In this document: positions 1-36,668 of the stretch, piece after piece
Numbering within the stretch: the stretch's first letter is position 1
How the letters are laid out: every line of letters starts with the position of its first letter
Assembly: GCA_950097015.1 (NCBI GenBank)
Contig: CATNEN010000011.1
Coordinates: 3,844,001-3,908,000 of the forward strand
From: Macrostomum hystrix
Taxonomy: Eukaryota; Animalia; Platyhelminthes
Direction: 5' to 3'
DNA length: 64,000 nucleotides
Program-made: the position numbers and the translations under genes
The notes under the pieces: model-generated
What the model saw: only the letters and a program-made list of their open reading frames with translations
What the model was told of the DNA's origin: nothing
The model's database searches: none

Positions 1-998
1 GGAAGGCTTCGAATTCTACCAACTGTTCGCGGGTGTCTCTACTTAACTCTTCGAATTCTTCGGGGTCGAGTTCGGCCCGAGCCTCCTCAAGATCGGAGAG
101 CTGATTCATCAGCCTGGAAGCAAAATAATGGGAAATATGTGTTTAGTATTGGATTATCTTGGGCGGCTGGGATTTTATGGGGATAATCCTGGCAGGTTGG
201 GATTCTAGTAGGATAATCCTGGTAGGTTGGGATTCTAGTAGGATAATCTTGGTAGGCTGGGATTCTAGTAGGATAATCCTGGTAGGTTGGGATTCTAGTA
301 GGATAATCCTGGTAGGTTGGGATTCTAGTAGGATAATCCTGGTAGGCTGGGATTCTAGTAGGATAATCTTGGTAGGCTGGGATTCTAGTAGGATAATCTT
401 GGTAGGCTGGGATTCTAGTAGGATAATCTTGGTAGGCTGGGATTCTAGTAGGATAATCTTGGTAGGCTGGCATTCTAGTAGGATAATCCTGGTAGGTTGG
501 GATTCTAGTAGGATAATCTTGGTAGGCTGGGATTATAGTAGGATAATCCTGGTAGGTTGGGATTTTAGTAGGATAATCTTGATAGGCTGGGATTTTAGTA
601 GGATAATCTTGGTAGGGATTCTAGTGGGATAATTTTGGGAGGTTGTGATTCTAATGGGATAATCCTGAAAGGTTGGGATTCTAATGGGATAATCCTGAAA
701 GGTTGGGATTTTAATGCGATAATCCTGGAAGGTTGGGATTCTAATGCGATAATCTTCGAAGGTTGGGATTCTAATGAGATAATTTTCGATGATTGTGATT
801 CTAATTTAAAAAATCTCTGATGATAAGGAATAAAATGCTAATCTAGACAAAAACTTACAAAACTACAAAGGAATAACACAAGGAAATAAAACAGTCTTCA
901 CAAATAAGCAAGTTAGCAGACATGCCTCACCTATCCATCTGATCCATTGCATTTTGAATCAAAGCAGCGTTTTCCAATTTTCCACGACTCGTTGACAT
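1..998 (-). CDS. LZIC: LZIC (leucine zipper and ICAT-homologous protein), 5' part. Exons 998-931 and 113-<1; the gene continues past the window edge
   Basis: Spliced translation MSTSRGKLENAALIQNAMDQMDR|LMNQLSDLEEARAELDPEEFEELSRDTREQLVEFEAF matches the LZIC N-terminus as I recall it (MASRGK...[21 protein letters not shown]). Canonical ag|gtgagg donor and ttccag| acceptor in a compatible phase. Confidence 0.9.
150..815. repeat. 30-bp minisatellite in the LZIC intron (GGGATTCTAGTAGGATAATCYTGGTAGGYT, changing to a diverged 30-bp variant after ~620)
   Basis: Visible tandem units; explains the 10-aa periodic ORFs 87-473 and 159-632. Confidence 0.95.
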
Positions 999-3015: not shown

Positions 3016-3360
3016 TGGGCACAATGGCAGTGTGCAGAGCATGAATAAACCAATGCAGTATGATATTATCTAATACAGCTGGATAGACCATCTCTCTATA
3101 AATGGCAAATAGAACCCAGAAAAGAGAAAAAGCCAACTGAAAAAATAGAACACTTGTAGGCATATATCGTTTTTTGACTTTTTTATTAATAATAACAGCT
3201 TTTCATTTAAGACTGGATATTTTCTGTTAGCTAATAGACTTACCAATGACATGGTAGCACTAGTACCAGCCAAAATCCCATTAATGCAGTGCAGCTGTTT
3301 TGAATTCGCCTGTGTTAGGTGGCCTAGCAGACTGAACACTAGACAAAATGTGAGAAACAC
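3016..3360 (-). CDS. AIG1/ADTRP (FAR-17a)-like integral membrane hydrolase. Two internal exons, 3360-3244 and 3136-3016; first and last exons not resolved
   Basis: Spliced translation ...SATMSL|LAFSLFWVLFAIYREMVYPAVLDNIILHWFIHALHTAIVP resembles the AIG1 FW...DREMIYP...WLNHGMHTTVLP segment. Canonical gtaagt donors and in-phase ag acceptors. Confidence 0.7.
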
Positions 3361-4807
3361 CTTTGAAAAACAAAAACAACAAAAAAATGAGAATCAAGAA
3401 AAATAAAAATGTCAAAAATGAAAAAATGTAATTATTATTAGCTTAGGCCTAGTATTGAAAACTTTTTATTTAATAATGCAAATATAAATAAATGCATTGG
3501 CCCTTGCTTGGTGCAAATCTAATTTTTATATGTATTGGAATATATGCATAGCTTGTAAAATAAAATAAATAAAAGATAGGGGCCTAGGCCTAGTTATGCT
3601 TGAAAAAAAATAAAAAGTTAAAAGCAGGAATATAATTTTTTTATCTATAAGTTATATCTAAAATTCTAATATAAATAGATTAATCAAACCCTGAAATAAA
3701 ACCCCAATTGACAGGCCCCTGGCCTAAAGCTTATTTTCTTAAATTAGTGCGGCATCTGTATTTCCGTGAAATATTACTAACAAAACAAAACCAGTAAAAC
3801 AAGATATGAAATTACTCAAAAGATAAACATATTGATAAACGAAATGCACATTCAAGAGTTATAAAACATTAAAAAGTAAATGCCAGCGAGCTGACACAAG
3901 TGAAAATGGGAGAAATTGCGTTTTGGTAACTAACGTGCAGCTGTCCAGATTGACCCCTTCACAGCATCATCCATAAGCAAACGATTTTTGTACATCTACA
4001 CCTTGCTGTAACCAAAGATGATTCGAACTAACTCTTGGATAAATGCAACACAACTTATTGTTCCTTTTTACGATTCACGGGATGAAGCTTAACGTAAGTG
4101 AATTTATTATGTAAATATATATATCTATGTCAAAAATAGAACCCGTAATTTTGACGATAAGGATGTCTGCACATATTATATCTATAAAGCACGATTTTAT
4201 AAAGTAAAGAACACGCCAGATACGACAGTACATGTACATGCATTATGATATGCACACCGCAGCAACACACTAGATGTATACGTGCCTATATAACGCCGTT
4301 GAAAATATCAGAGTGCGAAACTTATTGACATGATATTACTGGTATCAAGGACTACTAGTAGTTAGCTATTTATATCCTTTGACTGGAATATGCAGAAGCA
4401 CGTAAAAGGTTGACGAAAAAAAGTAAGCAGGTCCATGCTAAGTGCGAGGCAACAAATGTGCATCGTGTATACTGATGAGGCTACTTATGGCAGACAAAAG
4501 TCTCTAAATCAAAACCCATTTATTCTTTATTAAAGCATATAGCTTTAGCATTTTGGATCTTTAAAAAGCAGTTTCTATTTAAAACGTGACTAAGATAGGA
4601 ATCAACACCAAAATAGATCAGAAATGGATCGGAATATAAAAGAATATCTTATCGACACATAACATATGAAAGAAAAGAAATGGTAATTAATGTGCTTTGT
4701 TAAGCTTTGAATATGATAGTCACTGGTTCATGGAACAATTATAATTACAAGCTTGCGCGAGCTCGTGTGCACAAAAAGCGACAATAAAATGATTTACTAG
4801 CCTACTG

Positions 4808-7237
4808 TTAGTAGACGCTCATGGACGCCTGATAGATGCCGGCGATGTCGTCGCGCGTCTGCGGACAGGGCGCAATATTGCGCAGTCGATGCTGCGGCAG
4901 GACGCCTTCGACCAGAGAGTCGACGTGGGACGCATCGAAGCCGAGAGCGCGCAGACCGTCGGGTACGTCCAGGTCGTTCATCAGTTGGCGAACTTGATCA
5001 GCGAGAACCTGGCATTGCAGTGCGTGAGTTTGAGTGTACGGGGCGATTAGAGATTTTAATGACATCGCCAATCTCACCTTCCCAGCGTCGTCCTTTCGTT
5101 TCCTAGAAACGTCGGCTCCCAAAAGTCGCGCAGCTTCCAGATGACGCTCCGGCGAAGCTGCGCTAGTGAATTCGAACACTCGGGGGGCGGTCACAACCAC
5201 GGACAGGCCGTGCGGAATCAGCGCGTGACCTTCGGGATAGCCAGCAGAGCGATAGCCACCGCTGTTAGCCGAGACACTGGCTGCCAGACCGGAGATCGGG
5301 TAGGACAGGCCGTGGCACAGGTGGACTCCGGCATTGCCGAAGCCGACACCGGCCATACAGGCGGCTAGGTGCATTGCGGAGCGCGCCTCCGTGTCGTCCG
5401 GGTTCCTGACCGCGCGCCGGAAGTAGCGCGACACGGCGTCTAAGGCCCAGCGGCACCAGACGTCGCTAATTGGATTCGAGCCCTGACGGTCAATGATTTA
5501 AAATGTTTCCCTATACGGTTGATACCGCACCGAGCGATATGTAACAAAAAACACTAGAAGCTAACGAAGGAAAAAATCTAAAAGAAAGATTATTGAAACA
5601 AAATTACTTGAAAATGTTAGAAAATTGGTAAATTTAAGAGCCACTGAATCTAAAATTCTTCTGTTCTTTTGCGTTCTACTGACAGTAAAGTAGTATGAAA
5701 ATTGTGTTAGTTTAGTGATATGAGCTAGCAAACTTAAACCCCTCTGGCTATTTTGGGGCACAACAGAAATGAATAGATTTAGATTATGCAAAGCTAACAA
5801 CGGTCTCACCTGATAGGCCGGTCTCATTTTAGGATCCAGGGGTCGGGGCACTCTCTGGTGATAGGGCAAAGCAGTGAATGACTCGAGAGCGTGGCAGACA
5901 ACATCGAAGCCGCTGTAGGCGGCCACCCTATTGGGCATGGTAGCCGTGTGATCCGGATCGATTAGGCCCAGAGTTGGTCTCAGAGCTCGATTGGCGATGC
6001 CAGTCTTGGCGTGCATGGACTCGAGATCGAACACGGCCACGCCAGTAGTTTCACTGCCAGTACCGGCGGTTGTTGGCACAGCTATTAGCGGCTTCAGCTG
6101 ATGCGTGACAGGCAGACCGCGACCAATCGGAGCGTTGACATAGTCTAGGAAGTCGGCGGACGGATTCGTGACGTAAAGATTGGCAGCTTTGGCGGTGTCC
6201 ATAACACTGCCGCCGCCAACTGCCACAAAGGCGTCATAGTTGGCTTTGCCTGCAGCCTCAATGGCGGCTTTGAATGAGGAATCGGTCGGTTCAACGCGAA
6301 CATCCGGGTAGACATCGAAAGGAATGCGGCTGGCTGTTAGACTGTTCGCTACCTGGCGAGTAAATACAGTCACGCTTAATTTAACCATTTGCTTAGTGCT
6401 TGGCTACGAGCAATCTTCTTGAACTTTTAAGCATTCTCTAAAAGGATTAGAACAGTGTCTAACAGCATTCGAACAGTGTCTAACAAGATTAGAACAGTGT
6501 CTAACAGGATTCGAACAGTGTCTAACAGCATTCGAACAGTGTCTAACAGGATTCGAACAGTGTCTAACAGGATTCGAACAGTGTTTAACAAGATTCGAAC
6601 AGTGTCTAACAGGATTCGAACAGTGTCTAACAGGATTCGAACAGTGTCTAAAAGGATTCGAACAGTGTCTAACAGGATTCGAACAGTGTCTAACAGGATT
6701 CGAACAGTGTTTAACAGGATTCGAACAGTGTCTAACAGGATTCGAACAGTGCCTAATAGGATTCGAACAGTGTTTAACAGGATTCGAACAGTGTCTAACT
6801 GGTTAAGTGTTTATCAATCAGATAGGATTCAAAAAGTTCCTAACAGTTATGAGGCATCGTCAAGAATTCTGCTACTTTTTGTCCTATCGGACTATCGGAG
6901 ATAGGAATTCTTTCTAACAGGTAATCGTGCATAGACAAACGCTGCACACCTTCTTAAACGGCGGCAGTTTGGCCAACTGATTGTCGGTGAATACCAGAAC
7001 CCGACTGACGCCCAGGTTGACAGCATCCTGGCCAATCTCTCTGGTAACTCCAGGACCATATCGTACAGTAGAGACGGCCATCTCAAAGGCGTACTCAGTC
7101 TCCTGGAGAGCCTGATGACATTGTCTGTGATGCAGCCCTGAGCCGCAGGCGCTGTGGGCCGGACAACGGGTGCCGGAACCCAGTTCAAGAACCTCGCGCA
7201 TTGCGGCCAGTACGCGGCCTCGCAACTGTTGAGCCAT
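4808..7237 (-). CDS. ADHFE1: Hydroxyacid-oxoacid transhydrogenase, mitochondrial (iron-dependent ADH family). Exons 7237-6950, 6352-5810, 5482-5078, 5008-4808; ~478 aa
   Basis: Motifs EYAFEMAVSTVRYG, VGGGSVMD, VPTTAGTGSETT, GSNPISD, GFGNAGVHLCHG, LPQHR. All introns GT-AG and phase 0. Targeting-peptide-like N-terminus. Confidence 0.95.
6440..6800. repeat. 21-bp minisatellite (AGGATTCGAACAGTGTCTAAC) in ADHFE1 intron 1
   Basis: About 16 visible tandem units. Confidence 0.95.
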
Positions 7238-7614
7238 TTTATTTAGTAAACTAAAAAACTGTATAGCCTACTTGTCAGTGACTTAGTCAGTAGTGCAGAT
7301 GGGAATATTTCTTTTTAAAACTGGAAAACAAATTCAAACGTCACTGCTTTGGAATCGTCTACATATTTATTGGAATTTTTTCCTAAAAAGGAAAGAAAGG
7401 CATTAAGATAATTAGACGGAATGGATGAAAGCCAGACAAAGGGATAACAAATTAACTTAGCATGAGAGGACGGCTGTCAAACTGAGGCGTATAGCATTTA
7501 AAATTAGGGGACTACAATAAACTAAATGATAACTAATAAATTGAGGTGAAATCAAACATAGAGGATAATTATCAACTTGAAGAGATAACAATGAAACTTG
7601 ATCAAAGATAAAGC

Positions 7615-8545
7615 TGAGGGGATAACTGTTAAACTGAGGGAATAACTGTTTAACTGATGGGATAACTGTTAAACTGAGGGGATAACTGTTTAACTGAGGG
7701 GATAACTGTTAAACTGAGGGGATAACTGTTAAACTGATGGGATAACTGTTAAACTGATGGGATAACTGTTAAACTGATGGGATAACTGTTAAACTGATGG
7801 GATAACTGTTGCCTCAATGGTTAAGGCAACTGTTAAACTGATGGGATAACTGTTTAACTGATGGGATAACTGTTAAACTGAGGGGATAACTGTTTAACTG
7901 ATGGGATAACTGTTTAACTGAGGGGATAACTGTTAAACTGAGGGAATAACTGTTGAACTGATGGGATAGCTGTTTAACTGAGGGGATAACTGTTTAACTG
8001 ATGGGATAACTGTTTAACTGAGGGGATAACTGTTTAACTGAGGGGATAACTGTTAAACTGATGGGATAACTGTTAAACTGAGGGAATAACTGTTGAACTG
8101 AGGGGATAACTGTTTAACTGAGGGGATAACTGTTAAACTGAGGGGATAACTGTTTAACTGAGGGGATAACTGTTAAACTGAGGGGATAACTGTTAAACTG
8201 ATGGATAACTGTTAAACTGATGGATAACTGTTAAACTGATGGGATAACTGTTAAACTGATGGGATAACTGTTGCCTCAATGGTTAAGGCAACTGTTAAAC
8301 TGATGGGATAACTGTTTAACTGATGGGATAACTGTTAAACTGAGGGGATAACTGTTTAACTGATGGGATAACTGTTTAACTGAGGGGATAACTGTTAAAC
8401 TGAGGGAATAACTGTTGAACTGATGGGATAACTGTTTAACTGAGGGGATAACTGTTTAACTGATGGGATAACTGTTTAACTGAGGGAATAACTGTTTAAC
8501 TGAGGGGATAACTGTTGAACTGAGGGGATAACTGCTTAACTGATG
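7615..8545. repeat. 21-bp minisatellite (TTAAACTGAKGGGATAACTGT) upstream of ADHFE1, with an internal 462-bp higher-order duplication
   Basis: Tandem units; the interruption GCCTCAATGGTTAAGGCAAC occurs at 7811 and 8273. Confidence 0.95.
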
Positions 8546-9529
8546 GTATCTATAGCAATCAAACAGAGTGGACATATCAAGCAAAACCGTATTTCTTAAA
8601 AGGTTGACAAACTTTAAGTAAAGAATCACCCTTCAGTTAAACTTGTCTCAGTCATAGCTAACTGGAAGTGTTCATAAAATGAATCTTACGAATATAATTA
8701 GCTTCGCTACCTAGACCATTCATATATCATTGTACTCGTATAGCTTCTAAATAGTTGATCAAGAAAATCTTAAGCTCAATTCTAGCTATCTAGTTGGATA
8801 TCTAAACTGCCTTGCTCGACTAAATGATTGCGATAAGAAATCTAAAAGAAACCAGTTCATAGGGACCAGTTTAATACTGTATCTGGTCTACCTGTGCTTG
8901 CCATTTTCTATAGTCGATGAAACTCTTTAAGAAAAATTTAAACGAAAAGAAATTGAAACACCGAGAGCTATCGAATCATAGCAAAATTTTATTGTGACGA
9001 AAACTATATGAAAAAACAAACTCTAATTAATAACGTGAGCACAATTTTTCAATGCTTTATATTTTTTCCTCCGGCTAATAAAAACGCAGAGCTGAGCATA
9101 ATGCTGCTTTATAATGAGAAATCAATTGAACAAACATTATGCTCAGAATTTAATGAGCAGGTTTGTTATATATATATATATATATATAGGTTAAAAATAA
9201 GAGTCGATTACCAATAACAAACAGTCCTTCATCAAAGTGTAAAACTGTACCATATCGTATGGCGTAGAGAGAAAAAAAGCGGTGCATTGTATTGTAAATA
9301 AAACTAGAAACACGAGTGAGGCCATGGGTGTGCAAGAATGAGAACAATAAATGTATTAGGGTCACACTAATGCGGGGTTAGTAGGGATTAGAAGAAAATG
9401 TATTTCCCAGTCTACAAGGTTCTGAAGCGAAAGACAACAGCAAAAAACACGATTCAGAAAATGTGTAAATTCGTTTAAAAAGCTACAGTTTTAGAATTCT
9501 GTCTTGAATACTCACGAAAAGGCTGGTGC

Positions 9530-10200
9530 TTCATCTGGGAGACTTAGCTACTCAATCTGAGAATCTGGGAGACTTGGCTACTCAATCTGAGGATCTGGGA
9601 GACTTGGCTACTCAATCTGAGGATCTGGGAGACTTGGCTACTCAATCTGAGAATCTGGGAGACTTGGCTACTCAATCTGAGGATCTGGGAGACTTGGCTA
9701 CTCAATCTGAGGATCTGGGAGACTTGGCTACTCAATCTGAGGATTTGGGAGACTTGGCTACTCAATCTGAGGATCTGGGAGACTTGGCTACTCAATCTGA
9801 GGATCTGGGAGACTTGGCTACTCAACCTGAGGATCTGGGAGACTTGGCTACTCAATCTGAGGATCTGGGAGACTTGGCTACTCAATCTGAGGATCTGGGA
9901 GACTTGGCTACTCAATCTGAGAATCTGGGAGACTTGGCTACTCAATCTGAGGATCTGGGAGACTTGGCTACTCAATCTGAGGATTTGGGAGACTTGGCTA
10001 CTCAATCTGAGGATCTGGGAGACTTGGCTACTCAATCTGAGGATCTGGGAGACTTGGCTACTCAATCTGAGGATCTGGGAGACTTGGCTACTCAATCTGA
10101 GGATCTGGGAGACTTGGCTACTCAATCTGAGGATCTGGGAGACTTGGCTACTCAATCTGAGGATCTGGGAGACTTGGCTACTCAATCTGAGGATTTGGGA
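9530..10200. repeat. 30-bp minisatellite (GAGGATCTGGGAGACTTGGCTACTCAATCT), ~22 near-identical copies
   Basis: Tandem units; explains ORFs 9526-10281 and 9544-10185. Confidence 0.97.
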
Positions 10201-10671
10201 ACTTCGATTTTTTTAAAAGGAGGAGCTGGGAAGACAGTTTCTATATTGAAGATTTCCAAGACATTCATTAAACCTGGATAAATAAAGGCTCTAAAAAACT
10301 ATTTAGTGCTCAAACAAGTCTAGGAGTATTAAAACTAAAAAAGCTTGTACATCGATCTTTTTAACAAGATCACAAAAAAATTTTAACGATCCAAAAATGC
10401 GAGTCCACAACACGTAATTTTTTGCACACAAAACATCAAGCAATTTTAGAATTTTTCGAAGAGGACATTAAAAATCTGAATGTCGTTTCCACTGGAAAAT
10501 TTTAAGATACATCGACTCTTAGTGTGTGTGTACTCTGTACGTAGTTTCGGTATAAAAAACACGATGTGTTGGACTAGGCTAAAAATAACGCTCAGATTGA
10601 GATTCTCACTACTGAAGCAAACACACCCAGTTTGACTCTTAGAGAAAGAAGCCGTTTCTCAGCCGCAGACT

Positions 10672-13600
10672 TCAGTCGGCTGACGGCATGCAGCCCAGAC
10701 GTTCAAAGGCGGCCTTCTCTAGGTCAGCGCGATGATCCGGGTGGGCAATCTGGATCAGGTGGTAGGCCCTCTGGCGCAGGCACTTGCCCCACAGCTGGGC
10801 AATGCCGTGCTCGGTCACCACGTAGTGAACGTGAGCGCGAGTTGTCACAACACCGGCGCCTGAGCAATTGACATCAGTTTGCATTCGGTGTTTTTAGTAG
10901 GTCTTCTGTAACGGGTCCTAGTTTAGTAGCCTAGTGGTTAGAAGACTTAAAGGTCGGGGGTTCGATTCCCGACATCACTATAAAAATTTGTGTCTTCAAA
11001 TTGGGATAATTGAGAGTGAGTTTGACGTTCCCCACCCCAGTCCATGGACTGAACAGCCAGCCGTACGCAGCCATCAAATGCTGTCGGCTGCACGACTGGC
11101 TCGATTAGTATCTCACTACTTTGGCATTGTGCTTGAGAACAGCGCGACTTAGAACTCACCCTCCTTGATGAAGGGCACAATTTTACTGCCGCCCTTCTTA
11201 GTTGCAGACTGCAGCGCAATGATAGGCACGCCAAGGCCGTCAGTGGACAGGGCGGCGCCCCTAATAAAGTCCATCTGGCCGCCAACACCGGAATAGATCC
11301 GGGGTCCGATTGAGTCGCTGACAACCTGGCCGGTGAGATCGATTTCTATGCACGAGTTGATAGCCGTCACACGGGGATTTAAGCTGATGATGGACACCTG
11401 CAAAGTTTTAATTGTGATAAAAAATGCATGAAAACATTTTCAAACAGAAAACTATGAGGACACAGACTAAGGACAAAGACTCAGGATCACTCAGTGAGTC
11501 AAACTCCCACAAAGACTCGGGATCATTCAGCAAGTCATGATCGACACAATGACTCAGGATCATTGGGTGAGTCATGATCCCAACAAGACTCGGATCCTTC
11601 AGTGAGTCACAATCTTACAAAGACTCCGGATAATTCAGTGAGTCACAATCCTCACAAAGACTCTGGATCCTTCAGTGAGTCACAATCCTACAAAGACTCC
11701 GGATCATTCAGTGAGTCACAATCCTACAAAGACTCCGGATAATTCAGTGAGTCACAATCTTACAAAGACTCCGGATCATTCAGTGAGTCACAATCCTACA
11801 AAGACTCCGGATAATTCAGTGAGTCACAATCTTACAAAGACTCCGGATCATTCAGTGAGTCACAATCCTACAAAGACTCCGGATAATTCAGTGAGTCACA
11901 ATCTTACAAAGACTCCGGATCATTCAGTGAGTCACAATCCTACAAAGACTCCGGATAATTCAGTGAGTCACAATCCTACAAAGACTCCGGATCATTCAGT
12001 GAGTCACAATCCTACAAAGACTCCGGATAATTCAGTGAGTCACATACCTACAAAGACTCCGGATAATTCAGTGAGTCACATACCTACAAAGACTCCGGAT
12101 AATTAAGTGAGTCACAATCCTACAAAGACTCTGTATCCATGTCAGTGAGTCACAATCGCCACAAAGACTCTCAGACCAAGTCTCACCTGATTCACAAACT
12201 GAATATCGCACAGCTCCACCATGGCGTTGTCGTCAATGAAATTGAACACCCGATTAGTGCCGATGACAAATCCGGTGACAATCTTTCCGGGTTTAATCTT
12301 CTTCCTGGCGTTGGTGATGGCGCCAGATTCGGTCAGATCGACAACACCGTCGGAGAACATCTCGGTGTGGACGCCCAGGTCTTTGTGCTCGGTAAGGGAG
12401 GCCAGGACAGCATCCGGTATGCTCCCAATGCCAGTTTGCAGAGTGGCTCCGTTAGCCACTAGATTGTGAGCAATCAGTTTCCCAATCTCGCGCTCTTCCG
12501 GGCTAACGCCGCGCGATGTCATCTCGTGCATCGGCTGCGGCTTGTGCACCATGCAGTCAATGTGGGAGCAGTGAATCGAGGCGTCGCCGCGAGTTTTTGG
12601 AAGTTTGGGATTAACCTGCCATTGCGTGACAGTAGAGTGACATTAAAAAATAACTCTGATAAAACCTCATCATTGAAATTCTCACCTTTTAAATCTAAGG
12701 TCTCATCCTTACACACCTCACACCTCAATTTTAAACCAAGATCTCATTAGATTTTCGGATTTAAAACCTAAATCTCATGGTTTAAAACCTAAATCTCATG
12801 CTTTAAAGCCTACATCTCATGCTTTAAAGCCTACATCTCATCATTTAAAACCTACATCTCATTCTCTAAAAAACTAAATTTCATCCTTTAAAACAGGGGC
12901 CGGCAAACTCCGGCCAACGGGCCAGTTGCGGCCTCCGAAGCTGCCAAATCCAGCCCGTTGCCCCTTCCCACACCAACAATATTGTTTCATATTTTACCTG
13001 ACTCATCTCTCCTCGGTCCCTTCTCTCTAGTATCTCATCTCTCCTGTCTCGTCTCTTCCGTGTCTTATCTCTATCGTGTCTATCCTTCCCGTTTCGCATC
13101 TCTCCTCTGTCTTATCTCTGTCTCATCTTTATCTCATCTCTCCCGCGTCCTACCTCTTATATCTCTCATCTCTCCCTGCTATCTTTTATCCGTCTCATTT
13201 CTCCCCTATCTCAAATTTCTACAGTCAATACGGCCCGCTTTCGTCTTTTAGGTTCTCTCTTTGACCCGCTAGCTAATCATTTTGCCAACCCCTGCTTTAA
13301 CACCTACATCTCATCTGTTAAAAACTACATCTCACCCATCCGAACCTACATCTCACCCATCCAAACCTACATCTCACCCATCCAAACCTACATCTCACCC
13401 ATCCAAACCTACATCTCACCTATCAAAACCTACATCTCACCCATCAAAACCTACATCTCACCCATCCAAACCTACATCTCACCCATCAAAACCTACATCT
13501 CACCCATCCGAACCTACATCTTACCCATCCAAACCTACATCTCACCCATCAAAACCTACATCTCACCCATCCGAACCTACATCTTACCCATCCGAACCTA

Positions 13601-14731
13601 CATCTCACCCATCCGAACCTACATCTCACCCATCCAAACCTACATCTCACCCATCCAAACCAACATGGCACCTTACATCATTAGTCCCAAAAGCTCACCT
13701 GAGCCACAATATACCTAGCATTCTGTATAGCGGCCCTGGTGCAATCAACAGAAGGTCCCAGACTGCAGAAGCCGTGTCTGTCAGGAGCCGTAACCATGAT
13801 CAGGGCGATGTCTAGCTGGATGAATCCGCGCCTGAATAGCAGCGGAATCTCGGACAGAAATATCGGCGTGAAATCCGCCCTACCAGCTTGGACTGCCTCG
13901 CGACAATTAGACGAAGTGAAAAATGAATTGCTGCGAAAGATGCCCTCGCATTCAGGGGCATTGTAGGGCGCATCGCCCTCTGTGTGAATGTGCATCAGGC
14001 CGATGTTTTTTAGCCTACGCCGCTTTCCAATCTCAACCATGCGCTCAATAAGGTGAGTAGGCGTGGCCGCACCGCCATGGATGAAGATCTTCTGGTTGGA
14101 GTCTAGCAACCGGTCGAATACCTTGGAAAGCGGAAGAGGGGGCGGATACTGATGGGTAGAGGGGAGCGAGTACTGATGAAGAGAGGGGCGGATACTGATA
14201 AAGAGAGGGGCGGATACTGATAAAGAGAGGGGCGGATACTGATAAAGAGAGGGGCGGATACTGATAAAGAGAGGGGCGGATACTGATAAAGAGAGGGCGG
14301 ATACTGATAAAGAGAGGGGACGGATACTGATGACTAGAGGGGGCGGATACTGATAAAGAGAGGGGCGGATACTGATAAAGAGAGGGGCGGATACTGATAA
14401 AGAGAGGGGCGGATACTGATAAAGAGAGGGGCGGATACTGATAAAGAGAGGGGCGGATACTGATAAAGAGAGGGGCGGATACTGAAGCAGACTATAAAAA
14501 TTAATAAGTAACCGAGCTACTTATGTAAGAACAAGCTTCTCTAACCTGGTCAGCATTTAGCCAGACGGGACTCTTATTCGGTATGGGATGAAACGGCTCC
14601 TGCTGAGTGTGCAGTGTAGAAGCATAAGTGTGCTGCGCGCGACGAGATAGCGAAACAGCCGCCTGCTTTGAGAGGCCAACTAAACTCAGTAGTTTTTTAC
14701 TTGGCAAGCATAGCAACAAACGACTGGACAT
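10672..14731 (-). CDS. Acetyl-CoA hydrolase/transferase family protein (acetate:succinate CoA-transferase / 4-hydroxybutyrate CoA-transferase-like), probably mitochondrial. Exons 14731-14546, 14121-13699, 12615-12187, 11397-11160, 10859-10672; ~487 aa
   Basis: Motifs IFIHGGAATP, GRADFTPIFLSEIP, DRHGFCSLGPSVD, LQTGIGSIPDAV, LGVHTEMFSDG (family catalytic Glu), GVGGQMDF, VVTTRAHVHYVVTEHG. Canonical, phase-consistent introns. Basic, Ser/Leu-rich N-terminal presequence. Confidence 0.92.
10926..11150 (+). mobile_element. tRNA-headed SINE-like element in CoA-transferase intron 4
   Basis: A-box-like TAGCCTAGTGGTTAG and B-box GGTTCGATTCC; related heads at 35362 and 39050. 3' boundary uncertain. Confidence 0.55.
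11460..12165. repeat. 39-bp minisatellite (TCAGTGAGTCACAATCYTACAAAGACTCCGGATMAT), with alternating variants, in CoA-transferase intron 3
   Basis: Tandem units; explains ORF 11675-12106. Confidence 0.95.
12690..13665. repeat. 21-bp minisatellite (AAACCTACATCTCACCCATCC-like) in CoA-transferase intron 2, split by a hAT MITE
   Basis: Related AAACCTACATCTCA units at 12690-12890 and 13300-13665. Confidence 0.85.
12894..13294. mobile_element. Non-autonomous hAT (Charlie-like) MITE
   Basis: 14-bp TIRs CAGGGGCCGGCAAA / TTTGCCAACCCCTG (2 mismatches). 8-bp flanks CTTTAAAA / CTTTAACA (7/8 identical TSD). Confidence 0.75.
14135..14485. repeat. 22-bp minisatellite (GAGAGGGGCGGATACTGATAAA) in CoA-transferase intron 1
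   Basis: Visible tandem units. Confidence 0.95.
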
Positions 14732-14814
14732 TGTTCTGGCTGGAACATGGATGGTACACGGCTAATATTTACGAATTCTCTACACTCTTTAGCGTGATTT
14801 AGTGTGATTACTTA

Positions 14815-15470
14815 GTTTGATATTTGCAGGGGCGGATTCCCTACATTCTTCAGTGTGATATTTGCAGGGGCGGATTCCCTACATTCTTCAGTGTGATATT
14901 TGCAGGGGCGGATTCCCTACATTCTTCAGTGTGATATTTGCAGGGGCGGATTCCCTACATTCTTCAGTGTGATATTTGCAGGGGCGGATTCCCTACATTC
15001 TTCAGTGTGATATTTGCAGGGGCGGATTCCCTACATTCTTCAGTGTGATATTTGCAGGGGCGGATTCCCTACATTCTTCAGTGTGATATTTGCAGGGGCG
15101 GATTCCCTACATTCTTCATTGTGATATTTGCAGGGGCGGATTCCCTACATTCTTCATTGTGATATTTGCAGGGGCGGATTCCCTACATTCTTCATTGTGA
15201 TATTTGCAGGGGCGGATTCCCTACATTCTTCATTGTGATATTTGCAGGGGCCGATTCCCTACATTCTTCATTGTGATATTTGCAGGGGCGGATTCCCTAC
15301 ATTCTTCATTGTGATATTTGCAGGGGCCGATTCCCTACATTTTTCAAAGAGATATTTGCAGGGGCCGATTCCCTAAATTTTTTAAAGAGATATTTGCAGG
15401 GGCGGATTCCCTACATTTTTCAAAGTGATATTTGCAGGGGCGGATTCCCTACATTTTTCGAAGTGATATT
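14815..15470. repeat. 38-bp minisatellite (TATTTGCAGGGGCGGATTCCCTACATTCTTCAKTGTGA) between ACBP and the CoA-transferase
   Basis: About 17 visible tandem units. Confidence 0.95.
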
Positions 15471-15775
15471 TGGAGGCAAAAATAGAAAATAATATCAGGT
15501 CAATCAGTCATAGAAAAATTCCCTCAGTGACCTTCAGCCATTGATAACGTACTTATAGACGTTTTTTCTTAACTTTTAACTTTTAATTAGCAAACCTTCA
15601 TACCATTACAGGATTTAAAATAGGTGTCAATTCAATTGTCATTGGCACTACATCCAACAGTAAAGTAACAGAAGACCGGTTATAAATTATGTAGCAAAAA
15701 CTCAATGTCTCACAAAAAAGCTAGACTAAACCAGGCATTGTTCACTAACTGAGCACAACATCAGTGGACAGAGTG

Positions 15776-17059
15776 TCAGACGCCATACTGCTCAATAAGT
15801 CGCTTTGCCAGCTCAATATAAGCAGCCCTAGCCGCCTCAGTGGCTGTGCCCTTCTTCTCATTCCAACGATCCCATTTGGCTTTGCCTTTGAAGTCAAGCA
15901 TGCCAGGCCTGGCCGTATTCACATCGCCAACCGTGGTCTGCTTGAATAGGCCATAAAGTTCCAGCATTTCATCGTCAGTTGGGCGAGCCTTCAGGTTCTT
16001 GACCTTCTCGGCGTAGTCATTGAATTCGGCCTAAAAGTTAATTAAAAAAAAGTTTTTAAAGACATTTTTGCAATGAAAAGTTTGGTCTTGGCACCTCAAA
16101 TCTGAAATCTTACATTGCACATTCTCACAAACATGGTATCATGAAAACAAATAATATGTTGCTACATTGAATTCATAGTTTTAAGCATCATTTTTGTCTG
16201 AATATAGAAGAACCAACATTTTTGAAGATCTCTTATAGATCATATTCATAGTCAATATTTTTTGCTATATATATCTAGCTAGCATTGCTTATCACATTCA
16301 CAAAGTTTAATGTCAAATGTATCCACAGGTTTCAAAAAGTAGGCCTAGATTCACTATTTTGGTTTTCATTTTCAGAGTTTGGAAAAAATATGTCAAAATA
16401 TTTGCTTTTCTAATTTGAAAAAAGGGGATTTCTTCCATTTCTAGCATAGACTTTGTGTTGAATTACATAGTATTGATTTTGCTCTTGTGCTTACTTTCTA
16501 TTTTGGAGCCATAGTTGGAAAACCTGTACATACAATTTTACTATATATATAGCTATTACAAAATTATTACAAAAGAAAGCTAAAGTTAAAAAGTCAAAGC
16601 TTTAGTGTATGCTTATGTACCTCTCATAGTGACCAGACAAATAGCCATGTGTGTTAATTATCTAGTAATCATAAAAACCGGAATGCTGATAAGACATGGT
16701 TACTGCACCAATAATGCAGTTTGCTATTTGTCTGATAACCAGACAAACAGCCTAGTTTCTTAATTGCCAGGTTACCAGACAATAACCACTTCTGTTTTTT
16801 AAACTGGGCATGTCTAATTGGCATGAATGAATCATTAATACATTAGCTAGTTAAATTATAGCTAGACAAAGCCATAAGATCAGCTGGGCTAAGTAGGCTA
16901 GCCATAAAGTAAAGTTAAATTCGTAAATAAAAAGTAAAAAGAAAATTGAGATTTAGAATGCTAAGAATAGAAAATTGTATGCTGTTTTTTCAACAAACGA
17001 GCTATACATAAAACAAAATCAGATGTCAAAGAAAAATGTCCCCAAATTACCTCAGACAT
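15776..17059 (-). CDS. ACBP: Acyl-CoA-binding protein (ACBP/DBI). Exons 17059-17051 (MSE) and 16030-15776; 87 aa
   Basis: MSE|AEFNDYAEKVKNLKARPTDDEMLELYGLFKQTTVGDVNTARPGMLDFKGKAKWDRW contains the ACBP signature (LYxxxKQxTxGD, PGxxDxKGxAKWDxW). Confidence 0.95.
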
Positions 17060-17681
17060 GGCGGACTGGCGATAAGTCAAAATGTCAATAAAAAATCGAA
17101 AAATTTCAAGAACTGAGTTCTTTGGATGCCGATACTAAATTTGAACGAATTTTAGTTATCAAATCAAATATTTGTCTATCTTTTAAATTGACCAATTAAA
17201 ATCCAAATTTAAAGGGAGTGTTAAAAAATACTGCATTTTACTTTTGTTCTTAGGTATGTTTTAGAACATAATAATACAGAAGTACTATTTTTGTTATTCG
17301 TGTCCCGAAATTTCAGGACGCTCTTTTAAACTGATAACTTTGTACGTTACGCGCGTGTACGAGAGCAATATCAATAAAATTCGTTTCTCATCTCTTCCAA
17401 ACACTACTAAACAACGAATACTTCTGATTTTTAGTAGTCCTTGATTAGTTCTAAGACTGATGCTTGTTTTTTAATTTTTCAGTAATGTTTTGAGCGATTA
17501 TAAATAATCGCGATAACATATATCTTTTGATTATGGAGTCAGCCCACATAAAATGAGAAGATGAAGTCAAATTTCAAGCCGGAGTTTTTAACTGCAGAAT
17601 AGTTTATTCTCTCTAAAATATTAGAAGGCTAAAATAACAAAAGGGGATTATTCCTTGGAAAAATCGCTTCTCGTTTCATTG

Positions 17682-20600
17682 ATGGATTTGCGTACCAAGG
17701 CCTCAACGGAGAGCCGCGCACCTGCTACGGCTGCCAAGAGCGGCACACCACCCTGCAGACGAGGACAACGCAGTGTGCGTCGGCGTATTGAACGACGCCG
17801 CGAGCGAAACTGCCGTGGCCGACACCGTGCCCGCGAGCGTCGCACTGCTGGCAGAACCTCTATGCGCAGTGGTACTGTTTTCTCCGGGTGGCGCCGGGGA
17901 CCACGAGGTCCACAACCAACGGATCCAAGCTGAACCAAATTGCACGCTGCATAAACAGAAACAACAACTAAGAGTCGCGACTTGGAACTGCCGGACTCTG
18001 CGAGCAGGTTGGAGGCAACATCTACTGGCAAAAGTAGCTACCGATCTGCATCTAGACATTGTAATGCTGCAGGAGCTCTCTATTAAAACCGATCCGGGGC
18101 TCCATCAGGAGCACCCCGGTGGCGGCTGGCTCCTTCAGTTCACTTCAGCAGACGCAAAAGGCCGAGGAGGAGTTGGTGTCCTCACCAGCCCACGGCTATA
18201 GAAATGTTTTCGATGCGAAAGCTTATCGCCAAGACTACTACGAGTCGACCTTCGTCTCCGCACCCGTAATATTCACTTATTCTGTGCGTATGCACCCACA
18301 GCTGCGCACCCGATGGAGCACCGTCAATTTCTGGAGTTCCTCTCGGCGCAACTGGAGGCGGTTGCTCAGCGTGACTCAGTGCTGGTGCTTGGAGACCTCA
18401 ACGCTGTTATGCGAAAGTCTGAACGAGCTCTCTTTGTCACCCCGCGCGAAAACAACAACACCGATGCACTAATGGATTTCGCGGACCTGCACGACCTGGT
18501 CTCAGCGAACACACTCTTTAGGAAACCAGCTGTGAGGCTGGCAACGTTCACTGGATTCAAGCGCCCGACCCAGAACGCCAGTGGAAAGTTTGCCACAAAA
18601 AGACTCGCACAGCTGGACCACATTCTAATCCGCTGGCGAGAACGGCGCCGTGCAGTCAACTGCGACACGGTGGCACCTTTGGCAATTCGGTCTGACCATA
18701 GACTGCTTTACTGTGAACTGCGCCTTAGGGACCTACTATACCGACCACCGAAGCGGCAGCCAAAGCGCTTTTTCCGCGCCTTGCGCGACCCAAGCACAAG
18801 AGGCCGTTTCTGCCTGGCCTTTGCCGACGCGCTGGACAAACGATCGGAACCAGCAGCACCTGCCAAATACTCGGACGTCAGCAGCGCTGTCCAGGCGGCC
18901 GCTACTAAAACGCTGCCTCTGGTGAAACCAGTAGCAAGCGGTCAGCCTGTGTGGCAAAACGACGAGGCGCTGCGACAGGCAAACTGTGGAAAGACTGCGG
19001 AGGAGCGGACAGCCTGTGGAGGAAGCTGAGAAAGCCTTAGCAGAGGTTTTTAAGGCCCGGCAACGCGCCGCTGTTGAGGACGCAATTCAAGAAATCACTG
19101 ACGCCGGCCCCGACAAGAAGCCCCGTGCCGTTTGGTCTGTTGTAAACCAATTGACTGGCCGTAAACGGCGCAGTACGCTGAACCTGTCTGGTGACACGCC
19201 CGAAGAGAGGCGAAACGAACTGAAAGCCTATTTTTCTCTGGCATCCTTAACGCGTCTCCACCGCCGCCAAGAGACGACATGTCACTGCCCGTGGAGGTCG
19301 CACTGCCAGAAGAAAGCTCCGTCAACACCAGTCCTATCACCATTGACGAGGTGCTTCTGCTCGCTAAGAAAACACCGGGCGGCAAAGCCACCGGACCCCA
19401 CAACGTGCCTGTCGAAGTGTTGCGCCTCCCGCTGGTGGATCAAGAAGTCACGCAAGTGATGAACTGCGTGCTGGCGAGAGGTCCCGCCCCCGCTGAATGG
19501 CGGACGGCGCACATCGTCGGGATCCCGAAGAAGCCCGGAACTTTCAAGGTCGAAGAGCATTGCGGAATATCCCTAATGTCCTGCGCCGCGAAGCTGTACA
19601 ACAGGGTAGTGCTGACGCGGCTGCAACCTGTGTTGGACCCGTTCCTCCGGCGAGAGCAAAACCCGTTTCCGGCCAGGCAGGGGCACGGTGAACCAGATTC
19701 TCGCTTTGCGCCGCATTTTAGAAGAGACCCGTATCCACCAGTCGGCGGTCATCTGCATCTTCGTGGATTTTCTAAAAGCCTTCGACTCAGTGTCGAGACG
19801 GGTCATCCCGAAGATCCTGCGCGCGTACCATGTGCCTGACCAGCTGGTAACGGCTGTGATGGCCCTGTACCAGGAGACCAGGGCGGCAGTTGTGACGCCG
19901 GACGGCCTATCCGATTTCTTCGACACGACCTCAGGTGTGCTGCAAGGCGACACACTCGCCCCCTTTCTGTTCGTCTTGGTCCTGGACTGGGTGCTGCGCA
20001 CCGGCCTCCCTGACGACGCCAACGGCTTCCTGCTCTGTCGCAGGACAAGCAGCCGACACCCCGAAAGACGACTCTCTGTCCTGGCGTACGCGGACGACCT
20101 GGCGCTGCTGTCCAGCTCAATCGAAAGTGCTCAGCATCTGCTGGACAAGCTGACTGCGGCGGCGGCAGTAGTCGGGCTGTCCGTGAACACCAAGAAAACA
20201 ATGGTGCTGACCGTCCCGAATGACCTCATCGGCAAGCGGGACTGCTGCCGCTCTGCGAGACCTTCATTTATCTCGGCGGTCAAGTGCCCGACACCCTGGA
20301 CGACATGGCGCGACGCAGGGCGCTTGCCTGGGCAGCCTTTCGCACCCTGCGGACTGTCCTGCAGTGCCCCACGCTGCCGGATCGGTTGTTTCAAGCCGTC
20401 ATAGAGACCGTCTTTCTCTACAACGCTCAAACGTGGACTCTGAACGGCACGCAGGAGAAGCAGCTCGATGCCGCCCACGCCGGACTCCTGCGAGCCGCCT
20501 TCGGCGTCCACTATTCGCCGACTGCCGTCACCAACACCAGCAACGACGAGCTCTATCGCCGGGCCCAGCTCTGCCGGCCAAGTCAGCTGCTGCGCATCCG

Positions 20601-20866
20601 GCGCCTGCAGATGGCTGGCCACGCCATCCGTGCGGAGCAGCGCTGCCCCGAGCCACTGCAGGACGTGCTGCTGCTTTCCCTGCGGGGGCCCTGGCGGCGT
20701 GGTCAGGCGAGGGCGCTACGCTACCCTGAACTGCTACTGACTGACGCTAGAATCTTCGACCCCCGCGGACTGACAATTCTGCGCCACTCTGCTCTTGCAC
20801 GTGCCTTTTGACGGCAGCCCCTTTGGCTTCGGCCTTGGGTTGTCGTCCTTTGTTGTTGTTGTTGTT
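17682..20866 (+). mobile_element. Non-LTR retrotransposon (APE endonuclease + RT, RTE-like), apparently full length but disrupted
   Basis: APE motifs ATWNCRTL, IVMLQE, LGDLNA, LDHIL, SDH. RT motifs QGDTLAPFLF, YADDLAL, FIYLG. (TTG)n tail at 20850-20866. TSD GTTTCATTG(A) at 17673 and 20867. In-frame TAG at 18199 and ~4 frameshifts. Confidence 0.92.
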
Positions 20867-36255: not shown

Positions 36256-36635
36256 ATGTCGATGCGAGTAGCTTTGCTAACTCGCTTGCTTGTGTCTCAC
36301 AAATTTCGAACTGCACTTTCTTCGAACCGATTGACTTCAACTTCAAGATTGTCGAGTCAAACTTTTTCGCTGTTGCTAAGTCTTTGTCAATGTCAATCTT
36401 TGTCAATGCAGACAACTAGCGGTGCGGCTTTTCGGAGTGTCAGATTTCTGTCAACCTCGAAGCCGCCTTCGAAGTCTTCAACGAACTCCTCAAGTTCGTC
36501 TTCTTCCGATAGTGACTCGGATAGTGACTCGGATTCGGATTCAGATTCAGATTCGGACAATGAATCCGATGCCACTTTGGCTGCGACAAAGACAGAAATA
36601 AAGAAAGGTTTTAATGCTGCTACTGTGGCTTCTGC

Positions 36636-36668
<33 letters not shown>

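What the first reader, a model, noticed from the sequence alone, without database searches (positions are those of the whole stretch)
3016..17059. Co-oriented acyl-CoA / hydroxy-acid metabolic gene cluster in an animal genome (ACBP - CoA-transferase - ADHFE1 - AIG1-like)
Seen: four consecutive minus-strand genes, separated only by repeats and AT-rich spacers. Known: ADHFE1 couples 4-hydroxybutyrate <-> succinate semialdehyde to 2-oxoglutarate <-> D-2-hydroxyglutarate, and its C. elegans orthologue hphd-1 oxidises 3-hydroxypropionate in the propionate shunt. This CoA-transferase family includes clostridial 4-hydroxybutyrate CoA-transferases and the Fasciola acetate:succinate CoA-transferase. 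Clostridia pair an iron-ADH 4-HB dehydrogenase with such a transferase. ACBP carries acyl-CoA; AIG1/ADTRP hydrolyse fatty-acid esters of hydroxy fatty acids. Inference: a co-regulated mitochondrial module converting short acyl-CoA <-> hydroxy acid <-> semialdehyde (4-HB or 3-HP, possibly for hypoxic metabolism). Functional clusters like this are unusual in animals.
Basis: partly seen in the sequence, partly recalled or inferred. Interest (0 to 1): 0.8.

Follow-up and report, generated by a model that had tools for sequence, protein, structure and literature searches.

The report
Flatworm gene neighbours, one likely operon
Four real same-strand genes (ACBP, an acetate/propionate:succinate CoA-transferase, ADHFE1 and an AIG1-like hydrolase) sit together in a Macrostomum flatworm genome. 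Only ACBP and the CoA-transferase look co-transcribed, as an ordinary spliced-leader operon, and the neighbourhood is not kept outside the genus, so a dedicated metabolic module is not supported.

Summary
Four minus-strand genes lie at 3.0-17.1 kb, with a different minisatellite in nearly every intron and spacer. The genome is a Macrostomum: ADHFE1 is 88% identical to M. lignano's, and the exact 35-nt M. lignano spliced leader (SL) is present. RNA contigs give a five-exon CoA-transferase mRNA that carries the SL 8 nt before its ATG. ACBP ends about 780 nt upstream of that acceptor, and 663 of those nt are a minisatellite unique to this locus and weakly transcribed. A paralogous ACBP-CoA-transferase pair lies on another contig, so the pair was duplicated as a unit. 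ACBP-to-transferase is therefore probably an SL-resolved operon, a known kind (about 15% of M. lignano genes). The transferase is a co-orthologue of the characterised Fasciola acetate:succinate CoA-transferase (ASCT). The order transferase-ADHFE1-AIG1 recurs in M. lignano. In Lineus, Saccostrea, Penaeus, Ruditapes, Hyalella and Petrolisthes the two enzymes lie on different contigs. Their neighbours in Dimorphilus, Capitella, Echinococcus, Schistosoma and Hymenolepis include none of the other cluster genes. No 4-hydroxybutyryl-CoA dehydratase was found in the genome. The proposed 4-HB/3-HP module is not supported. Other first readers flagged candidate SL operons elsewhere in this genome. Interest is low to moderate.

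The parts
17051..17059 (-). ACBP exon 1, coding part (ATG TCT GAG) followed by a GTAAT donor. The 5' UTR extends further upstream.
   Evidence: Sequence. The loose ends of RNA contigs at 16032 read into this exon.
15522..16030 (-). ACBP exon 2. Coding sequence runs to the stop at 15776-15778. The 3' UTR ends at about 15522-15596.
   Evidence: PF00887, 82.5 bits. RNA contigs of X5, X6, X7 and X1 are 100% identical and end in adapter sequence at 15522-15596.
14814..15476 (.). 38-bp minisatellite (17 copies) that fills most of the ACBP-to-transferase spacer.
   Evidence: TRF. All matches in the 220-Mb genome lie at this locus. 68-nt RNA contigs at 15046-15113 and 15176-15243 match it exactly.
14740..14741 (-). 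SL trans-splice acceptor AG of the CoA-transferase, 8 nt upstream of the ATG at 14731.
   Evidence: The loose end at 14740 in X5 and X7 reads, as reverse complement, CTGCGAAGACTCAATTTATTGCAT. That is SL positions 11-34, and the last SL G is shared with genome base 14740.
14544..14739 (-). CoA-transferase (ASCT-type) exon 1, with a basic, acid-free N-terminus (MSSRLLLCLPSKKLLSLVGLSKQAAVSLSRRAQH).
   Evidence: RNA joints and the ORF.
13697..14119 (-). CoA-transferase exon 2 (N-terminal domain).
   Evidence: PF02550, 72.8 bits. PDB 4-HB CoA-transferases, E = 5.5e-33. RNA joints with GT..AG ends.
12184..12613 (-). CoA-transferase exon 3, holding the conserved LGVHTEM motif.
   Evidence: Alignment to PDB 9vag and 2oas. 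RNA joints.
11159..11394 (-). CoA-transferase exon 4, holding SGVGGQ.
   Evidence: PF13336, 92.4 bits. PDB alignment. RNA joints.
10171..10858 (-). CoA-transferase exon 5, with the stop at 10672-10674.
   Evidence: PF13336. Contig records of 1998-2003 nt extend about 230 nt past 10401.
7252..10170 (.). Spacer between the transferase and ADHFE1, about 2.9 kb. It holds minisatellites at 9533-10204 and 7609-8543 and no recognisable gene.
   Evidence: TRF, ORF list, sequence.
6950..7237 (-). ADHFE1 exon 1 (ATG at 7237). Candidate acceptors TATACAG and TTTTTTAG lie 13-24 nt upstream.
   Evidence: tblastn with M. lignano P0001 and splice-site reading. Upstream comparison with L001. Trans-splicing here was not tested.
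5810..6352 (-). ADHFE1 exon 2.
   Evidence: PF00465, 118 bits. 87% identical to P0001.
5078..5482 (-). ADHFE1 exon 3.
   Evidence: PF25137. tblastn and splice sites.
4808..5008 (-). ADHFE1 exon 4 with the stop. It is preceded by a 69-nt in-frame, stop-free intron (5009-5077).
   Evidence: The gap in the alignment to P0001 and P0003 and the GT..AG ends.
3244..3360 (-). AIG1-like exon (VFLTFCLVFS...).
   Evidence: tblastn to the M. lignano AIG1-like gene in L001. Splice sites read.
3016..3136 (-). AIG1-like exon (LAFSLFWVLFAIYREMVYPAVLDNIILHWFIHALHTAIVP).
   Evidence: PF04750, 35.7 bits. 60% identical to the L001 gene. Splice sites read.

Best explanation
This is a stretch of a compact Macrostomum flatworm genome with four ordinary, intact-looking housekeeping or metabolic genes on one strand. 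ACBP and the CoA-transferase most likely form a two-gene operon. ACBP is transcribed from a promoter upstream of 17.1 kb. Transcription continues through a spacer of about 780 nt, of which 663 nt are a minisatellite. The transferase mRNA is released by addition of the 35-nt spliced leader at the AG 8 nt before its ATG. The transferase is one of three Macrostomum co-orthologues of the Fasciola acetate:succinate / propionyl-CoA:succinate CoA-transferase (ASCT subfamily 1B). Its expected role is acetate and propionate formation, with succinyl-CoA, in hypoxic mitochondria. The adjacency of this pair to ADHFE1 and the AIG1-like gene is synteny confined to Macrostomum and needs no functional reason. 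Shown here: the gene identities and models, the SL on the transferase mRNA, expression of ACBP and the transferase, duplication of the pair as a unit, and loss of the adjacency outside the genus. Inferred: co-transcription itself, the enzyme's substrates, and its mitochondrial location.
For: The genome is a Macrostomum: the best ADHFE1 hit is M. lignano at 88%, and more than 20 exact copies of the M. lignano SL are present (SL sequence from PMC8629364). RNA contigs 100% identical to the window give the five transferase exons with GT..AG introns and an SL loose end at 14740 in two runs. ACBP transcripts end at 15522-15596. The spacer minisatellite is unique to this locus and has exact RNA contigs at low depth, like the transferase's own introns. 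After subtracting the repeat the intercistronic distance is about 120-190 nt, well under the 1000-bp criterion used for M. lignano operons. A second ACBP exon lies 0.85 kb upstream of the paralogous transferase on contig C25. In the tree A and B are sisters (99/96) within a Macrostomum clade (100/99) that is sister to the clade with the Fasciola ASCT. Outside Macrostomum, ADHFE1 and the transferase are on different contigs in six species (contig lengths). No cluster partner lies within 10 kb in Dimorphilus, Echinococcus, Schistosoma, Hymenolepis, Capitella or Lineus.
Against: No single RNA molecule spanning ACBP and the transferase was seen, and contigs cannot give strand or ends. ACBP contig depth is about 15-25 times that of the transferase, although the tool warns that depth is a poor measure. 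An SL is also added to many monocistronic genes in M. lignano, so a promoter inside the spacer is not excluded. The third paralogue (C38, and M. lignano L012) has no ACBP within 8-10 kb. Whether M. lignano keeps ACBP upstream of its A copy could not be read, because the locus starts too close. The order transferase-ADHFE1-AIG1 is kept between two Macrostomum species, which neutral synteny or selection would both explain.
Confidence: 0.55

Rival explanations
1. There is no co-transcription at all. The four genes have independent promoters. The transferase is a monocistronic gene whose outron is replaced by the SL, and the adjacency, including the duplicated ACBP-transferase pair, reflects segmental duplication and chance.
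For: About 30% of M. lignano genes are SL trans-spliced but only about 15% are placed in operons. ACBP and transferase contigs differ strongly in depth. No bridging RNA was seen.
Against: The spacer is short once the repeat is removed. It is transcribed at intron-like level, and its minisatellite is locus-unique. The pair has stayed together in both copies since a duplication that predates the split from M. lignano.
Confidence: 0.25
2. All four genes (ACBP, transferase, ADHFE1, AIG1-like) form one long SL-resolved polycistron without a shared pathway, as in most nematode and flatworm operons.
For: All four are on the same strand. Pyrimidine-rich AG acceptors lie 13-33 nt before the ATGs of ADHFE1 and of the candidate AIG1 start. 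The AAGTAGGCT..CAG motif upstream of ADHFE1 is shared with M. lignano. The order is kept in M. lignano. The operon paper notes that repeat-rich intergenic regions split Macrostomum operons in RNA-seq assemblies.
Against: The transferase-ADHFE1 spacer is about 2.9 kb, and about 1.3 kb after subtracting the TRF arrays, which is above the published 1-kb criterion.
Confidence: 0.12
3. One reading: a selected, co-regulated metabolic gene cluster in which the transferase activates or releases 4-hydroxybutyrate or 3-hydroxypropionate/propionate, ADHFE1 oxidises the hydroxy acid, and ACBP and AIG1 play supporting roles.
For: The nearest solved structures to the transferase are 4-hydroxybutyrate CoA-transferases. 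The Fasciola orthologue also handles propionyl-CoA, going by its UniProt/NCBI name. hphd-1/ADHFE1 oxidises 3-HP in the C. elegans propionate shunt (PMC4951191). The adjacency is kept in two Macrostomum species.
Against: The adjacency is absent in every non-Macrostomum animal examined. The paralogous ACBP-transferase pair has no ADHFE1 within 10 kb downstream, and ADHFE1 is single-copy. ACBP has no presequence, and from general knowledge it binds long-chain acyl-CoA. No AbfD-type dehydratase is present. The theme 'acyl-CoA / hydroxy acid' is broad. By my own rough estimate, if 2% of genes fit the theme, about one such 3-of-4 run per genome is expected by chance.
Confidence: 0.08

Closest known systems
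SL trans-spliced operons of Macrostomum lignano (Ustyantsev & Berezikov 2021, PMC8629364)
   Same: Same 35-nt SL. Same-strand neighbours. The downstream gene is SL trans-spliced close to its ATG. The intergenic region is repeat-rich and falls under 1 kb after repeat subtraction. Two-gene size is the commonest class.
   Different: This ACBP-transferase pair is not described in the text I read. The precursor was not observed directly. The pair exists in two paralogous copies.
Fasciola hepatica acetate:succinate CoA-transferase (ASCT subfamily 1B; van Grinsven et al. 2009, cited in PMC3785491 and PMC9220675)
   Same: Same Pfam architecture. About 65% identity over exons 2-3. Same flatworm clade in the tree (99/99). 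N-terminus looks like a targeting peptide.
   Different: Macrostomum has three lineage-specific paralogues. Activity and substrates were not measured. The organism is free-living.
Clostridial 4-hydroxybutyrate genes (Fe-ADH 4-HB dehydrogenase, AbfT/Cat2 4-HB CoA-transferase, AbfD dehydratase)
   Same: An Fe-ADH family dehydrogenase sits next to a CoA-transferase of the same family as AbfT. The best PDB hits are 4-HB CoA-transferases.
   Different: No AbfD homologue in the genome. The animal enzymes belong to the metazoan HOT and ASCT1B clades. The two genes lie about 2.9 kb apart, and the adjacency is restricted to one genus.
ADHFE1 / hydroxyacid-oxoacid transhydrogenase (C. elegans hphd-1)
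   Same: 65-75% identity to annotated animal HOTs. 478 aa. Single copy.
   Different: Nothing unusual in the protein. Only its neighbours differ from those in other animals.

Membership tests
ASCT subfamily 1B / 4-HB-type family I CoA-transferase | AcetylCoA_hydro N-terminal domain plus AcetylCoA_hyd_C C-terminal domain | tested here: met
   PF02550 at 72.8 bits. PF13336 at 92.4 and 71 bits on separate exons.
ASCT subfamily 1B / 4-HB-type family I CoA-transferase | Conserved active-site motifs: the glutamate-bearing (S/T)EM motif and GXGG | tested here: met
   LGVHTEM aligns identically to 9vag and 2oas. SGVGGQ aligns to the same motif in 3gk7 and 2oas. Which residue is catalytic is from my memory of the AbfT literature and was not tested.
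ASCT subfamily 1B / 4-HB-type family I CoA-transferase | Orthology to the characterised Fasciola enzyme | tested here: met
   The M. lignano orthologues of the three paralogues form a clade (100/99) sister to the neodermatan clade that includes Fasciola P0398. The flatworm clade has 99/99 support. The window copy is 88% identical to P0415.
ASCT subfamily 1B / 4-HB-type family I CoA-transferase | Acetyl-/propionyl-CoA:succinate transferase activity; mitochondrial location | not testable with these tools
   Only a basic, acid-free N-terminal 34 residues can be read from the sequence.
SL-resolved operon (Macrostomum criterion) | Adjacent genes on the same strand with no opposite-strand gene between them | tested here: met
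SL-resolved operon (Macrostomum criterion) | Downstream gene carries the SL | tested here: met
   SL loose end at 14740 in X5 and X7. Not tested for ADHFE1 or AIG1.
SL-resolved operon (Macrostomum criterion) | Intergenic distance under 1000 bp after subtracting repeats | tested here: met
   ACBP 3' end at about 15522-15596 to the acceptor at 14740, minus the 663-bp array, gives about 120-190 bp. For transferase to ADHFE1 the figure is about 1.3 kb, so the criterion is not met for that pair.
SL-resolved operon (Macrostomum criterion) | Polycistronic precursor RNA | tested here: inconclusive
   Exact 68-nt RNA contigs lie in the locus-unique spacer minisatellite at low depth. No bridging record and no strand information.
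Functional metabolic gene cluster | Adjacency conserved beyond close relatives | tested here: not met
   Different contigs in Lineus, Saccostrea, Penaeus, Ruditapes, Hyalella and Petrolisthes. Unrelated neighbours in Dimorphilus, Echinococcus, Schistosoma, Hymenolepis, Capitella and Lineus. In Solemya the two genes share a 185-Mb chromosome and their locus tags are 36 apart.
Functional metabolic gene cluster | Members catalyse consecutive steps; co-expression | not testable with these tools
   No enzymology or condition-resolved expression was available. The AbfD-type next step is absent.
ADHFE1 / hydroxyacid-oxoacid transhydrogenase | Fe-ADH N- and C-terminal domains and closest similarity to animal HOTs | tested here: met
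   PF00465 at 118 bits and PF25137 at 81.5 bits. The top 120 hits are animal HOTs at 65-88% identity.
ACBP | ACBP domain as a small stand-alone protein | tested here: met
   PF00887 at 82.5 bits. Two-exon, 87-codon model confirmed by RNA contigs.
AIG1/ADTRP (FAR-17a) hydrolases | Far-17a_AIG1 domain over a full-length multi-pass protein, with the Thr/His pair | tested here: inconclusive
   One exon passes PF04750 (35.7 bits). Two exons match the M. lignano gene. FLTF and HALHT motifs are visible, but their assignment to Thr43/His134 is from memory. The N- and C-terminal exons are not modelled.

The most novel reading that the evidence does not exclude
The Macrostomum lineage assembled and keeps a polycistronic unit that co-expresses an ASCT-type CoA-transferase with ADHFE1, and with ACBP and AIG1. 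This would tie CoA transfer on propionate, 3-HP or 4-HB to hydroxy-acid oxidation during hypoxia. It would be a true functional operon in an animal, built independently of the clostridial 4-HB genes.
Probability: 0.07. Interest if true: 0.6.

Novelty: new member of a known kind. Interest (0 to 1): 0.27.

Why it matters
If the ACBP-ASCT operon is real, it is a documented, RNA-supported example of a flatworm operon that survived duplication as a unit. That illustrates how operons freeze gene order. The three ASCT paralogues in a free-living flatworm bear on how widespread anaerobic acetate/propionate metabolism is outside parasites. The main value of this check is negative: an attractive 'animal metabolic gene cluster' reduces to lineage-specific synteny plus an ordinary operon.

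Tried and rejected
1. ACBP-transferase fusion protein: rejected. ACBP has its own stop and transcript 3' ends, and the transferase mRNA starts with the SL.
2. Deep microsynteny: sought from both sides and not found.
3. ACBP upstream of the M. lignano A copy: could not be read. L001 starts about 1.6 kb before the transferase ATG, that stretch holds only minisatellites, and no reference was available for the first 6 kb of the contig.
4. Clostridial-type pathway completion: no HpaB_N/AbfD match in the genome. This is an exon-wise search, so absence is not proven.
5. Full AIG1-like model: low-stringency tblastn gave only two firm exons, one candidate exon (2685-2593) and a candidate start (3974).
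6. SL on ACBP itself: the 85-90-nt loose ends would fit an acceptor at 17113-17114 plus 25-30 nt of SL, or a plain genomic 5' UTR. Only 30 letters were shown, so this is unresolved.
7. Protopolystoma fragments from the large protein search lay on contigs too short for synteny.
8. All searches were exon by exon or used database orthologues.
Full report
WHAT IS THERE

Pfam scans of the minus-strand ORF pieces confirm four genes:
- ACBP: PF00887, 82.5 bits.
- A family-I CoA-transferase: PF02550 plus PF13336.
- An iron-type alcohol dehydrogenase: PF00465 and PF25137.
- A FAR-17a/AIG1-like protein: PF04750, 35.7 bits.

Tandem Repeats Finder shows a different 20-38-bp minisatellite in almost every intron and spacer. 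The rest of the window holds a LINE-like element (endonuclease plus RT, 17.8-20.8 kb, plus strand). It also holds an NDUFV3-like ORF, a glycosyltransferase and an ion-channel gene. Genes here are a few kb apart, so this is a compact genome.

WHOSE GENOME

The best ADHFE1 hit is Macrostomum lignano at 88% identity. All other top hits are animal hydroxyacid-oxoacid transhydrogenases at 65-75%. The assembly is 220 Mb in 42 contigs. It contains more than 20 exact copies of the 35-nt M. lignano spliced leader (SL sequence from PMC8629364). The window therefore comes from a Macrostomum species close to, but not identical with, the M. lignano assembly GCA_002269645.1.

GENE MODELS

ADHFE1:
- Exons 7237-6950, 6352-5810, 5482-5078 and 5008-4808, all with GT..AG introns.
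- 478 codons, against 479 aa in M. lignano.
- The last intron (5077-5009) is 69 nt, in frame and stop-free, which is why the ORF list shows one long ORF.

ACBP:
- ATG at 17059, a 3-codon first exon, then 16030-15776.
- 87 aa, ending ...IEQYGV, with no presequence.

CoA-transferase (taken directly from RNA):
- In three runs of one study, contigs 100% identical to the window give exons 14740-14544, 14119-13697, 12613-12184, 11394-11159 and 10858 to below 10401, with GT..AG introns.
- The coding part is 1464 nt, or 487 codons.

AIG1-like gene:
- Two firm exons, 3360-3244 and 3136-3016.
- A candidate start at 3974 and a candidate further exon at 2685-2593.
- The model is incomplete.

THE SPLICED LEADER

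In runs X5 and X7 the transferase contig continues beyond 14740 with 23-24 letters. Their reverse complement is CTGCGAAGACTCAATTTATTGCAT, which is SL positions 11-34. The final SL G coincides with genome base 14740. The genome upstream reads ...CCATGTTCCAG, so the leader is added in trans at that AG, 8 nt before the ATG at 14731.

IS ACBP-TRANSFERASE AN OPERON?

- ACBP transcripts end at 15522-15596, where the contigs run into adapter sequence.
- From there to the acceptor is about 780-860 nt, of which 663 nt are the 38-bp minisatellite.
- The published M. lignano criterion is a same-strand pair, a downstream gene with SL, and under 1000 bp after subtracting repeats. The authors note that repeat-rich intergenic regions are typical of operons there. 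The pair meets this criterion.
- The minisatellite occurs nowhere else in the 220-Mb assembly. The exact 68-nt RNA contigs at 15046-15113 and 15176-15243 therefore show low-level transcription of the spacer, at a level similar to the transferase's own introns.
- The strongest indirect argument comes from paralogy. The genome has three transferase paralogues, on C11, C25 and C38. The C25 copy again has an ACBP exon, 68% identical, 0.85 kb upstream on the same strand.
- M. lignano has orthologues of all three. In the tree A and B are sisters (99/96), with C outside them (100/99). The pair was therefore duplicated as a unit before the two species split, and it has stayed together in both copies.
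- The C copy has no ACBP within 8-10 kb in either species.

Against the operon: no bridging RNA was seen, contig depth differs 15-25-fold, and SL addition also occurs on monocistronic genes. I put co-transcription of this pair at about 0.6-0.65.

WHAT THE TRANSFERASE IS

- The nearest solved structures are 4-hydroxybutyrate CoA-transferases, with LGVHTEM and SGVGGQ conserved.
- Full-length relatives are found across invertebrates. NCBI names them either '4-hydroxybutyrate CoA transferase-like' or 'succinyl-CoA:acetate/propanoyl-CoA:succinate CoA transferase'.
- The Fasciola hepatica protein of that name (P0398) is the characterised ASCT of subfamily 1B (PMC3785491, PMC9220675).
- In the tree the Macrostomum paralogues are sister to the neodermatan clade containing it, and the flatworm clade has 99/99 support.
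- The expected function is acetate and propionate formation coupled to succinyl-CoA in hypoxic mitochondria. That is inference from orthology.

IS THE LARGER NEIGHBOURHOOD MEANINGFUL?

Within the genus:
- In M. lignano contig NIVC01005060.1 the order transferase-ADHFE1-AIG1-like is kept on one strand with similar spacing.

Outside the genus, contig lengths:
- ADHFE1 and the transferase lie on different contigs in Lineus, Saccostrea, Penaeus monodon, Ruditapes, Hyalella and Petrolisthes.
- In Solemya they share a 185-Mb chromosome, with locus tags 36 apart.

Outside the genus, 10-kb flanks:
- The transferase gene in Dimorphilus, Echinococcus, Schistosoma and Hymenolepis shows no ACBP, Fe-ADH or AIG1, either by annotation or by tblastn.
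- ADHFE1 in Capitella and Lineus likewise shows none of the cluster.

Other points:
- ADHFE1 is single-copy in this genome and is absent from the paralogous C25 locus.
- No AbfD-type 4-hydroxybutyryl-CoA dehydratase was detected.
- The transferase-ADHFE1 spacer is about 2.9 kb, and about 1.3 kb without the TRF arrays.

Expression correlation could not be tested.

WHAT REMAINS OPEN

- Acceptor-like sites lie just upstream of the ADHFE1 ATG and of the candidate AIG1 ATG. A short motif upstream of ADHFE1 is shared with M. lignano. An ADHFE1-AIG1 operon, or even a four-gene polycistron, is therefore not excluded.
- This also prevented a look-up of transcript contigs for ADHFE1.

VERDICT

The locus is best described as a probable two-gene SL operon (ACBP to an ASCT-type CoA-transferase) lying next to ADHFE1 and an AIG1-like gene through Macrostomum-specific synteny. 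It is a new member of a known kind, of low to moderate interest. Other first readers of this scan have flagged candidate SL operons elsewhere in the same genome. Those notes are unchecked leads, not support.

Noticed in passing
window 14731-14775 plus the SL: The SL ends in ATG. On the transferase mRNA it is followed by 8 nt before the gene's own ATG, so the leader AUG is out of frame. It would open an 18-codon upstream ORF (ATG CCA GAA ... TGA) that overlaps the real start.
   Followed up: partly
window 4-16 kb; L001 (M. lignano) 0.2-21 kb; L009: Nearly every intron and spacer of these genes holds its own 15-38-bp minisatellite in both Macrostomum species. The array in ADHFE1 intron 1 shares short cores (CACTG, CTGTTAGA) between the species. 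The 38-bp ACBP-transferase array is unique in the genome.
   Followed up: partly
G000 C15, C17, C42 (about 11.6-kb period); C39:12667884-12685526 (about 927-bp period): Exact SL copies lie in long-period tandem arrays on small contigs. A second tandem array on C39 carries an SL-like variant with three mismatches (…GACTCTCTTTTTTGCATG).
   Followed up: no
G000 C25:7068500-7072800 and C38:25252000-25254700: There are two further ASCT-type CoA-transferase paralogues. Macrostomum has three where most animals in the hit lists show one or two.
   Followed up: partly
window 17650-20810 (+): A non-LTR retrotransposon remnant or copy (Exo_endo_phos plus RVT_1 ORFs, GC about 55%) lies directly upstream of the ACBP promoter region.
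   Followed up: partly
window 5009-5077 (-): A 69-nt ADHFE1 intron is in frame and free of stops. If retained it would insert 23 residues. The M. lignano orthologue has a longer intron at the same place.
   Followed up: partly
window 36256-37335 (+), 40469-43121 (+), 45790-46485 (-): An ORF with a C-terminal NDUFV3 motif, glycosyltransferase family 2/7C exons (GalNAc-transferase-like), and an ion-transport-domain exon.
   Followed up: no
window 87-820: A 30-bp minisatellite (21 copies) is open in several frames (PAYQDYPTRI repeats). A weak match to the third gene of the M. lignano locus L001 (19284-20288) suggests that synteny continues past the AIG1-like gene.
   Followed up: no
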